DNA of 63,714 nt, the filler included, from Octopus bimaculoides (Eukaryota): assembly GCF_001194135.2 (NCBI RefSeq). It is 3 parts of one record of this genome, joined end to end, with 100 filler letters (N's around TTAATTAATTAA, not from the genome) between each part and the next. Parts side by side here need not be neighbours in the genome. Positions count along the whole stretch, not along the records: positions 16,592 to 42,712 come from NC_068982.1; 2 more parts are not named here. One strand, written 5' to 3'. Made by a program: the position numbers and the translations under genes. This document shows, one piece after another, positions 25,475 to 26,094 of this stretch; position 1 is the stretch's first letter, and each line of letters begins with the position of its first letter. The notes below the pieces were generated by a model. It saw only the letters and a list, made by a program, of their open reading frames with translations. It was not told the DNA's origin and did not search any database.

Positions 25475-26028
25475 ATACTAGCTTCGGTAGTACATATATT
25501 CTTTTCTACTCTAGGCACAAGGCCCTAAATTTTGGGGGGAGGGGGCCAGTTGATTAGATCGACTCCAGTATGCAACTGGTACTTAATTTATCGTCCCTGA
25601 AAGGATGAAAGGCAAAGTCAACCTTGGTGGAATTTGAACTCAGAACGTAAAGACAGATGAAATACCGCTAAACATTTCGCCAAGCATGCTAACGTTCCTT
25701 ATTTCTTTATTGCCCACAAAGGGCTAAACATAGTGGGGACAAACAAGGACAGACAAAGGGATTTAGTCGATTACATCGACCCCAGTGCATAACTGGTACT
25801 TAATTTATCAACCCCGAAAGGATGAAAGGCAAAGTCGACCTCGGCGAAATTTGAATTCAGAACGTAACGGCAGACGATATACCACTAAGCATTTTGCCCG
25901 GCGTGCTAACATTTCTGCCAGCTCACCACCTTCAGTAGTACATATGTTAAAATTGGAATGATGCAGAGAAGATTTGCATGGCTCCTGCACAAGAGTGACA
26001 TGCAAATTCATGAAGTGTTCCATATTTT
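25475..26028 (+). pseudogene. U6: Full-length U6 snRNA retropseudogene split by a SINE insertion (nt 1-26 at 25475-25500; nt 9-106 at 25931-26028)
   Basis: ATACTAGCTTCGGTAGTACATATATT and TTCAGTAGTACATATGTTAAAATTGGAATGATGCAGAGAAGATTTGCATGGCTCCTGCACAAGAGTGACATGCAAATTCATGAAGTGTTCCATATTTT align without gaps to metazoan U6 (compared from memory). CpGs in the right part are decayed and the ACAGAGA box reads GCAGAGA. Confidence 0.93.
25501..25930 (-). mobile_element. Nested or dimeric SINE family B inserted in the U6 copy
   Basis: Two family B bodies ending in head TCTGCCAGCTCACCACC, flanked by the 18-bp duplication TTCGGTAGTACATATATT / TTCAGTAGTACATATGTT. Confidence 0.85.
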
Positions 26029-26094
26029 ATCACTGATGGTGCTCCAGTATTGCCATGACATTTGTACTGAAATGTATAAAAGAATAAAAGAATA
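26029..26094 (+). mobile_element. Retroelement 3' tail joined directly to the U6 T-tract
   Basis: GGTGCTCCAGTATTGCC...ACTGAAAT...TAAAAGAATAAAAGAATA resembles the family A tail GGTGCTCCAGCATGGCC...ACTGAAAC...TAAAAGAG at 41203-41250 and 60703-60768. Confidence 0.7.

What the first reader, a model, noticed from the sequence alone, without database searches (positions are those of the whole stretch)
25475..26094. U6 snRNA / retroelement-tail chimera with a four-T junction
Seen: once the SINE insertion is removed, U6 is complete (nt 1-106), ends in exactly TTTT (26025-26028) and continues into ATCACTGATGGTGCTCCAG...ACTGAAAT...(TAAAAGAA)2, the 3' terminus used by SINE family A. Established: mammalian U6/L1 chimeras join full-length U6 ending in about four Ts to a LINE 3' part, through RtcB ligation of the U6 2',3'-cyclic phosphate end; snRNA-headed SINEs (U1/U2-derived SINEU) are known in crocodilians. 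Inference: either the same ligation-then-retrotransposition route operates in a mollusc with a non-L1 partner, or this is a member of a U6-headed SINE family. I am not aware of either being described in cephalopods.
Basis: partly seen in the sequence, partly recalled or inferred. Interest (0 to 1): 0.8.

Follow-up and report, generated by a model that had tools for sequence, protein, structure and literature searches.

The report
Dead U6 copy fused to retroelement tail
A dead copy of the U6 splicing RNA is joined at its last four Ts to the final ~64 bases of an octopus SINE/LINE-type tail, most likely pasted into a minisatellite in one retrotransposition event; this kind of chimera is already known from vertebrates, so it is a taxonomic extension, not a new mechanism.

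Summary
A 106-nt full-length U6 lies at 25475-25499 plus 25948-26028. It is split by a 430-bp minus-strand SINE dimer with a significant 16-18 bp target-site duplication (TSD). U6 ends in TTTT (26025-26028) and runs straight into a 64-nt tail (26029-26092) ending in (TAAAAGAA)2. The tail is homologous to the 3' module of four SINE copies in the piece (p<2e-4), but it is their most divergent relative (67% to consensus).

The U6 is dead: both catalytic motifs are mutated, 5 of 7 CpGs have decayed, and there is no promoter. The same degenerate 20-bp minisatellite flanks the unit on both sides.

Best reading (about 0.7): one retrotransposition of a U6/tail chimera by a tail-specific LINE. RNA ligation and template switching cannot be told apart from one copy.

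Two limits apply:
- A TSD for the composite is not demonstrable (p about 0.03-0.12).
- No other copy could be retrieved, so a one-off chimera versus a U6-headed SINE family stays untested.

The non-L1 partner is not new. Doucet et al. 2015 describe U6-L2, U6-RTE and U6-SINE chimeras in platypus and Anolis. I rate this a new member of a known kind, of modest interest.

The parts
25130..25474 (.). Upstream flank: degenerate 20-bp minisatellite (unit TTATTTTTATGACAATGATA). No U6 promoter context.
   Evidence: TRF; wrap-around alignment to the unit
25458..25474 (+). Candidate upstream copy of a decayed 17-bp TSD of the U6+tail unit (TAGTATTTACAATTTAC). Weak.
   Evidence: TAGTAT is shared with 26093-26098. 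Anchored p is about 0.05-0.12; 17-mer global p is about 0.03-0.08.
25475..25499 (+). U6 snRNA pseudogene, nt 1-25 (5' stem-loop)
   Evidence: Alignment to human U6; sequence
25482..25499 (+). TSD copy 1 of the later SINE insertion (U6 nt 8-25)
   Evidence: 16 bp with 1 mismatch, or 18 bp with 2; score 14, p about 0.002; coordinates
25500..25698 (-). SINE unit 2 of the inserted dimer. It lacks about 13 nt at its 5' end and ends ...CCTAGAGTAGAAAAGA.
   Evidence: Self-BLAST; sequence; matches an O. vulgaris transcript at 79%
25699..25929 (-). SINE unit 1 of the inserted dimer. Full-length head, different tail (...GGGCAATAAAGAAATAAG).
25930..26028 (+). U6 pseudogene nt 8-106. Positions 25930-25947 are TSD copy 2 of the SINE insertion. 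ACAGAGA is mutated to GCAGAGA and AGC to TGC.
   Evidence: Rfam U6 80.6 bits; alignment
26025..26028 (+). U6 terminal T4, the junction with the tail
   Evidence: Sequence
26029..26092 (+). 64-nt retroelement 3' tail. It is homologous to the 3' module of the SINE family that ends at 24982, 41260, 41446(-) and 32781(-).
26077..26092 (+). Terminal tandem octamer (TAAAAGAA)2
   Evidence: TRF period 8, 100% match
26093..26109 (+). Candidate downstream copy of the decayed TSD (TAGTATCACATCTTTGA). Weak.
26093..26270 (.). Downstream flank: the same 20-bp minisatellite, resuming nearly in register
   Evidence: upstream ends at phase about 0, downstream restarts at phase about 15; BLAST of 26140-26187 against 25325-25372 gives 84%

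Best explanation
This is an old, dead chimeric retrocopy with no present function. A full-length U6 snRNA, ending in four U, was joined head-to-tail to the last ~64 nt of a LINE or SINE transcript. That fragment carries the 3' recognition module and the terminal (TAAAAGAA)n repeat used by a tail-specific ('stringent') octopus LINE.

Proposed sequence of events:
1. The LINE reverse transcriptase primed on the tail at a nick in a 20-bp minisatellite.
2. It copied the tail and continued through U6 to U6 nt 1. Either the two RNAs had been ligated beforehand (RtcB-type joining of the U6 2',3'-cyclic phosphate to a 5'-OH RNA fragment), or the enzyme jumped from the broken 5' end of the tail RNA to the 3' end of U6.
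3. The U6+tail unit was thus inserted in one event.
4. Later a dimeric tRNA-type SINE inserted into U6 between nt 25 and 26, and the whole region decayed.

Shown: the anatomy, the dead state of U6, the tail homology, the common flanks and the later SINE insertion. Inferred: the single event, the identity of the enzyme and the joining step.
For: 1. U6 is complete from nt 1 to T4, and the tail follows with no spacer in the same orientation.
2. The tail is homologous to the 3' module of four SINE copies in the piece and shares their terminal AAAAGAA-type repeat.
3. The best-preserved copy of that module folds into two hairpins (-18.2 kcal/mol, z -2.97), as expected for a LINE recognition element.
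4. The same degenerate 20-bp minisatellite lies immediately 5' of U6 nt 1 and immediately 3' of the tail, nearly in register. U6+tail is therefore a discrete insert, not a U6 gene with its promoter.
5. All other tail-module copies in the piece are attached to SINE bodies. An independent insertion landing within a few nt of the U6 end, in the same orientation, would have a probability of order 5e-4 (my estimate from 4 copies in about 23.5 kb).
6. In genomes with tail-specific LINEs, retrotransposed U6 copies (those flanked by TSDs) are found as chimeras with L2, RTE or their SINEs, never with poly(A), and TSDs are often only 1-9 bp (PMC4476161). U6 in such chimeras ends in about 4-8 T (PMC6789731).
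7. Two other SINE insertions with AAAGAA-type ends in the window have 16-18 bp TSDs. A TAGTAT match sits exactly 17 nt upstream of U6 and directly after the tail.
Against: - No statistically supported TSD brackets the composite (p 0.03-0.12; p 0.45-0.9 for unanchored local alignment).
- There is only one copy, so the junction cannot be compared with others.
- The LINE partner was not identified.
- The tail is only 67% identical to the SINE-family consensus. A profile built without it reaches only E 0.41 piece-wide.
- The 5 nt ATCAC at the junction cannot be assigned to either part.
- The finding was picked because it looks like a chimera, which is a selection effect.
Confidence: 0.7

Rival explanations
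1. It is one member of a U6-headed SINE family. A master U6+tail copy was transcribed repeatedly and its RNA was mobilised by the LINE through the tail.
For: - The head plus LINE-type tail architecture is that of a simple SINE.
- snRNA-headed SINEs exist (SINEU, PMC4494074).
- SINE modules in this window are visibly shuffled: one head type carries at least three tail types.
Against: - U6 genes of animals use an upstream promoter (established knowledge, also stated in PMC4494074). A retrocopy therefore carries no promoter of its own.
- The T4 Pol III terminator sits between the head and the tail, though internal T4-5 tracts are tolerated in some SINEs (PMC4758252).
- Only one copy occurs in about 23.5 kb, against 4 tail-module SINEs and at least 8 copies of the other SINE.
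- No junction-spanning reading frame or DNA match was found in any collection. Those collections appear to hold no cephalopod DNA, so this is weak evidence.
Confidence: 0.12
2. There were two unrelated events. A U6 pseudogene arrived first, and a 5'-truncated LINE/SINE tail later inserted by chance right at its 3' end (or the reverse order).
For: - No significant TSD brackets the composite.
- A 6-bp repeat TATCAC (26028-26033 and 26096-26101) could be read as a short TSD of the tail alone.
Against: - TATCAC is no better than chance, and its second copy is 3 nt away from the end of the tail.
- A tailless full-length U6 retrocopy has no obvious route in a genome whose LINEs need their own tail (PMC4476161).
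- The required coincidence of insertion point (within a few nt) and orientation is of order 5e-4.
- There are no lone tails in this piece.
Confidence: 0.13
3. It is a functional or recently functional U6 gene whose downstream flank merely resembles a SINE tail.
For: The Rfam score is well above the gathering threshold. The 5' stem keeps pairing through a compensatory G3-C17 to A3-U17 change.
Against: - The ACAGAGA box and the AGC triad are both mutated, and 5 of 7 CpGs have decayed.
- A 430-bp SINE interrupts the gene.
- The upstream 350 bp is a minisatellite with no TATA at -30.
Confidence: 0.03

Closest known systems
U6 chimeras with stringent non-L1 LINEs and their SINEs: platypus U6-L2 and U6-Mon-1; Anolis U6-L2, U6-RTE and U6-AnolisSINE2 (Doucet et al. 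2015, PMC4476161)
   Same: - U6 in sense orientation is fused at its 3' end to a short 3' part of a tail-specific LINE or its SINE.
- There is no poly(A).
- The 3' end is a simple repeat.
- TSDs are short or not detectable.
   Different: - The host here is a cephalopod mollusc; those reports cover vertebrates only.
- U6 here is full length, whereas platypus copies are almost all 5'-truncated.
- The partner LINE here is unidentified.
Mammalian U6/L1 chimeric pseudogenes (Buzdin 2002; Moldovan et al. 2019, PMC6789731)
   Same: Full-length U6 ending in a few Ts is joined directly to a 5'-truncated retroelement 3' part. RtcB ligation or template switching is proposed.
   Different: - The L1 partner has a poly(A) tail and 6-19 bp TSDs at an L1 endonuclease site.
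- Here the tail ends in an octamer repeat, and no TSD or endonuclease motif could be shown.
SINEU, snRNA-headed SINEs of crocodilians (Kojima 2015, PMC4494074)
   Same: An snRNA-derived 5' part is followed by a retroelement-type 3' part.
   Different: - SINEU heads come from U1/U2, not U6.
- SINEU families have many copies, subfamilies and shared internal deletions.
- None of these family properties could be tested for this single copy.

Membership tests
U6/LINE (or SINE) chimeric retropseudogene | Sense U6 joined at its 3' oligo-T end, without spacer, to the 3' part of a retroelement in the same orientation | tested here: met
   U6 nt 1-106 ends in T4 at 26025-26028 and the tail starts at 26029
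U6/LINE (or SINE) chimeric retropseudogene | The 3' part is a bona fide retroelement 3' terminus, including its terminal repeat | tested here: met
   Homology to the 3' module of four SINE copies: score 40 versus a control maximum of 24. Shared AAAAGAA-type terminal repeat. The LINE partner itself was not found.
U6/LINE (or SINE) chimeric retropseudogene | One target-site duplication brackets the whole composite | tested here: inconclusive
   Only TAGTAT (6 nt) is shared. p is 0.03-0.12 when anchored and 0.45-0.9 when unanchored. The test is underpowered in an old, AT-rich minisatellite.
U6/LINE (or SINE) chimeric retropseudogene | No U6 gene context (promoter); the insert sits in unrelated DNA | tested here: met
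   The same 20-bp minisatellite lies on both sides, nearly in register
U6/LINE (or SINE) chimeric retropseudogene | Independent copies show variable junction points in the retroelement | not testable with these tools
   No cephalopod genome was reachable. Scans and look-ups found nothing.
snRNA-headed SINE family (SINEU-like) | Many copies with the same head-tail junction, subfamilies and master copies | not testable with these tools
   A single copy in about 23.5 kb. No external copies were retrievable.
snRNA-headed SINE family (SINEU-like) | The copy can be transcribed through to its tail | not tested
   By inference this is unlikely. The animal U6 promoter is external (PMC4494074), and T4 precedes the tail. 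It needs an experiment or RNA-seq.
Functional U6 snRNA gene | Intact ACAGAGA box and AGC triad; uninterrupted gene | tested here: not met
   GCAGAGA and TGC instead; a 430-bp SINE sits inside the gene

The most novel reading that the evidence does not exclude
Octopus genomes hold a family of U6-headed retroposons (U6 + about 64-nt LINE tail) that amplified from master copies. It would be the first SINE class with a U6 head and the first snRNA-headed SINE outside vertebrates.
Probability: 0.12. Interest if true: 0.6.

Novelty: new member of a known kind. Interest (0 to 1): 0.3.

Why it matters
If the single-event reading is right, capture of U6 by a tail-specific LINE reaches beyond vertebrates to a lophotrochozoan. 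The capture could occur by RNA ligation or by template jumping. This supports the view of Doucet et al. 2015 that it is a general property of non-LTR retrotransposition, and it is the same kind of step by which new SINEs gain their tails. It does not open a new question. Its practical value is as a lead: a genome-wide count of U6+tail junctions in octopus would show how often this LINE recombines with Pol III transcripts.

Tried and rejected
- Exact look-ups of three window reading frames, including the 45-aa frame spanning the U6/tail junction, found nothing on record.
- Protein-word searches with the junction frame and with a SINE-head frame found no candidates.
- Scans for the U6-T4-tail junction pattern returned 0 hits in metagenome, bacterial/archaeal genome and viral contigs. 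Scans for the tail consensus and for the SINE head also returned 0. These collections appear to hold no cephalopod DNA.
- The LINE partner was not identified. No reverse-transcriptase-like reading frame exists in the piece. There were no tail 14-mers in the first 400 kb of the O. vulgaris transcriptome supplement, and no snRNA rows in its RepeatMasker table.
- Literature searches for U6 chimeras or U6 SINEs in octopus or molluscs found none. A full-text search for SINE sequence strings found none.
- An unanchored local alignment of the flanks was rejected as a TSD test, because minisatellite flanks resemble each other anyway.
- An early TSD run used a wrong tail end (26094) and was redone with 26092.
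- Folding of the U6-attached tail showed no significant structure (z -0.24). I make no claim that this decayed copy keeps the hairpins.
- The Rfam microRNA and snoRNA hits in the piece are microsatellite artefacts, far below their gathering scores.

Full report
**What is there**

Rfam finds U6 at 25921-26029 on the plus strand (80.6 bits, E 2.9e-19). The 5' stem in that alignment is made of unrelated sequence, and non-standard pairs are flagged. Reading the DNA shows the real 5' end of U6 at 25475-25499 (ATACTAGCTTCGGTAGTACATATAT).

The two U6 parts are separated by 25500-25929. This is a head-to-tail pair of tRNA-type SINE units on the minus strand. It is flanked by a duplication of U6 nt 8-25: CTTCGGTAGTACATAT at 25482-25497 and CTTCAGTAGTACATAT at 25930-25945 (score 14, p about 0.002).

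Removing the SINE and one duplicate gives a 106-nt U6. It has 16 substitutions and one fewer T relative to the human U6 sequence, which I supplied from memory.
- 14 of the 16 substitutions are transitions.
- 5 of the 7 CpGs have decayed.
- The ACAGAGA box reads GCAGAGA and the AGC triad reads TGC.
- A paired change, G3-C17 to A3-U17, keeps the 5' stem and may belong to the source gene.

So this is an old, dead copy.

**The junction and the tail**

U6 ends in exactly four Ts (26025-26028). ATCACTGATGGTGCTCCAGTATTGCCATGACATTTGTACTGAAATGTA follows at once, and then TAAAAGAA twice (26077-26092).

Four other copies of a related 3' module are in the piece. They end near 24982 (+), 41260 (+), 41446 (-) and 32781 (-), and all are attached to SINE bodies. 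How well the U6-attached tail matches them:
- Against the consensus of those four, it scores 40. No control window out of 6344 exceeds 24.
- Identity to that consensus is only 66.7%.
- A profile built without it finds it as the best non-member hit, but only at E 0.41 for the whole piece.

The tail is therefore a relative of that module, probably from the partner LINE or another subfamily, and not the SINE family's own terminus. The best-preserved copy of the module (41197-41260) folds into two hairpins followed by the A/G-rich repeat (-18.2 kcal/mol, z -2.97). That layout fits a recognition element of a tail-specific LINE. The U6-attached copy no longer shows significant structure.

**The surroundings**

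A degenerate 20-bp minisatellite (TTATTTTTATGACAATGATA) runs up to the first base of U6. It resumes directly after the tail, nearly in register: upstream it ends at phase about 0, and downstream it restarts at phase about 15. U6 plus tail is thus a discrete insert in unrelated DNA, without a U6 promoter.

**Target-site duplication**

The hexamer TAGTAT lies 17 nt upstream of U6 (25458-25463) and directly after the tail (26093-26098). Two other SINE insertions in the window have 16-18 bp duplications, so a decayed 17-bp duplication is possible. The statistics are marginal:
- p is about 0.05-0.12 for the anchored hexamer.
- p is 0.03-0.08 for the 17-mers.
- An unanchored local alignment shows nothing.

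A rival hexamer, TATCAC, around the tail alone is no better. The duplication test is therefore inconclusive. At this age, in AT-rich repeats, it is also underpowered.

**Origin of the sequence**

An Octopus vulgaris transcript printed in a supplement of PMC9115989 matches the window's SINE copies at 77-87%. This supports an octopod origin.

**Explanation**

The most economical account is one retrotransposition of a bipartite template: the last ~64 nt of a LINE or SINE RNA that the LINE enzyme recognises, joined to full-length U6. It explains three things:
- why a U6 copy could move at all in a genome whose LINEs need their own tail;
- why the junction is exactly at the U-tract;
- why both flanks are the same minisatellite.

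An independent second insertion would have to hit a window of a few bases in the right orientation. From the density of tail modules in the piece, I estimate that at about 5e-4.

Whether the two RNAs were ligated first (RtcB, PMC6789731) or the enzyme jumped templates (PMC4476161) cannot be read from one genomic copy.

A U6-headed SINE family is less likely. Animal U6 promoters are external (PMC4494074), and T4 precedes the tail. It remains untested, because every route to more cephalopod sequence failed.

**Comparison with what is known**

Doucet et al. 2015 already report the following:
- U6-L2 and U6-Mon-1 chimeras in platypus. There are 40 of them, with TSDs of 1-9 bp in 72.5%.
- U6 chimeras with L1, L2, RTE and AnolisSINE2 in Anolis.
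- The conclusion that this is a general property of non-LTR elements, including stringent ones.

The present case fits that description. The differences are a mollusc host, a full-length U6 and an unidentified partner. I found no report of such chimeras in molluscs in the held library.

**Verdict**

This is a new member of a known kind, with interest about 0.3.

Noticed in passing
window 25500-25929 (-): The SINE inside U6 is a head-to-tail dimer within one 16-18 bp TSD. Unit 1 (25699-25929) is full length with its own tail type (...GGGCAATAAAGAAATAAG). Unit 2 (25500-25698) lacks about 13 nt at the 5' end. This looks like a concatenation of two different SINE RNAs in one insertion, by template jump or ligation.
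   Followed up: partly
window 41436-42236 (-): Three SINE units lie head to tail, each preceded by ATTATTAGAGCTG (41765, 41992, 42224). The last unit carries the tail module related to the U6-attached tail. The cause may be repeated insertion at one target or a composite element; this is not resolved.
   Followed up: partly
window 31676-32089 (-) and 24445-24755 (+): A different tRNA-headed SINE ends in (ACAA)n and has a clean 13-bp TSD, ATTTCCCATTACA. Its 3' half recurs at 24445-24755 (94% identity), directly abutting the next SINE and starting at an assembly gap.
   Followed up: partly
window 34307-34548 (-): A full-length SINE (34325-34530) has an 18-bp TSD, ATTATTGTGTGTAAMAAA. A 5'-truncated SINE fragment lies about 85 bp upstream (34620-34720).
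   Followed up: partly
window 41197-41260 (+): The least-decayed copy of the tail module folds into two adjacent hairpins (GGCUGUGC/GCAUGGCC and CAGUC/GACUG), with -18.2 kcal/mol and z -2.97. It is a candidate LINE recognition element.
   Followed up: partly
window 18160-19100, 26690-26890, 28150-28500, 39650-39770, 40950-41050: Rfam hits to mir-297, mir-466, mir-3149 and similar families are (TG/TA)n microsatellites. All are far below their gathering scores and none is a real RNA gene.
   Followed up: yes
window 17299-38593 (seven N runs, e.g. 23856-24444, 30526-31331): The piece holds 2666 N in seven assembly gaps. None lies between 24445 and 30525, so the U6 locus is contiguous.
   Followed up: yes
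window 29400-29900: Long CAT/CAC and AAT-type simple repeats give spurious poly-His and poly-Asn reading frames next to SINE fragments (28904-29072, 29955-30148).
   Followed up: no
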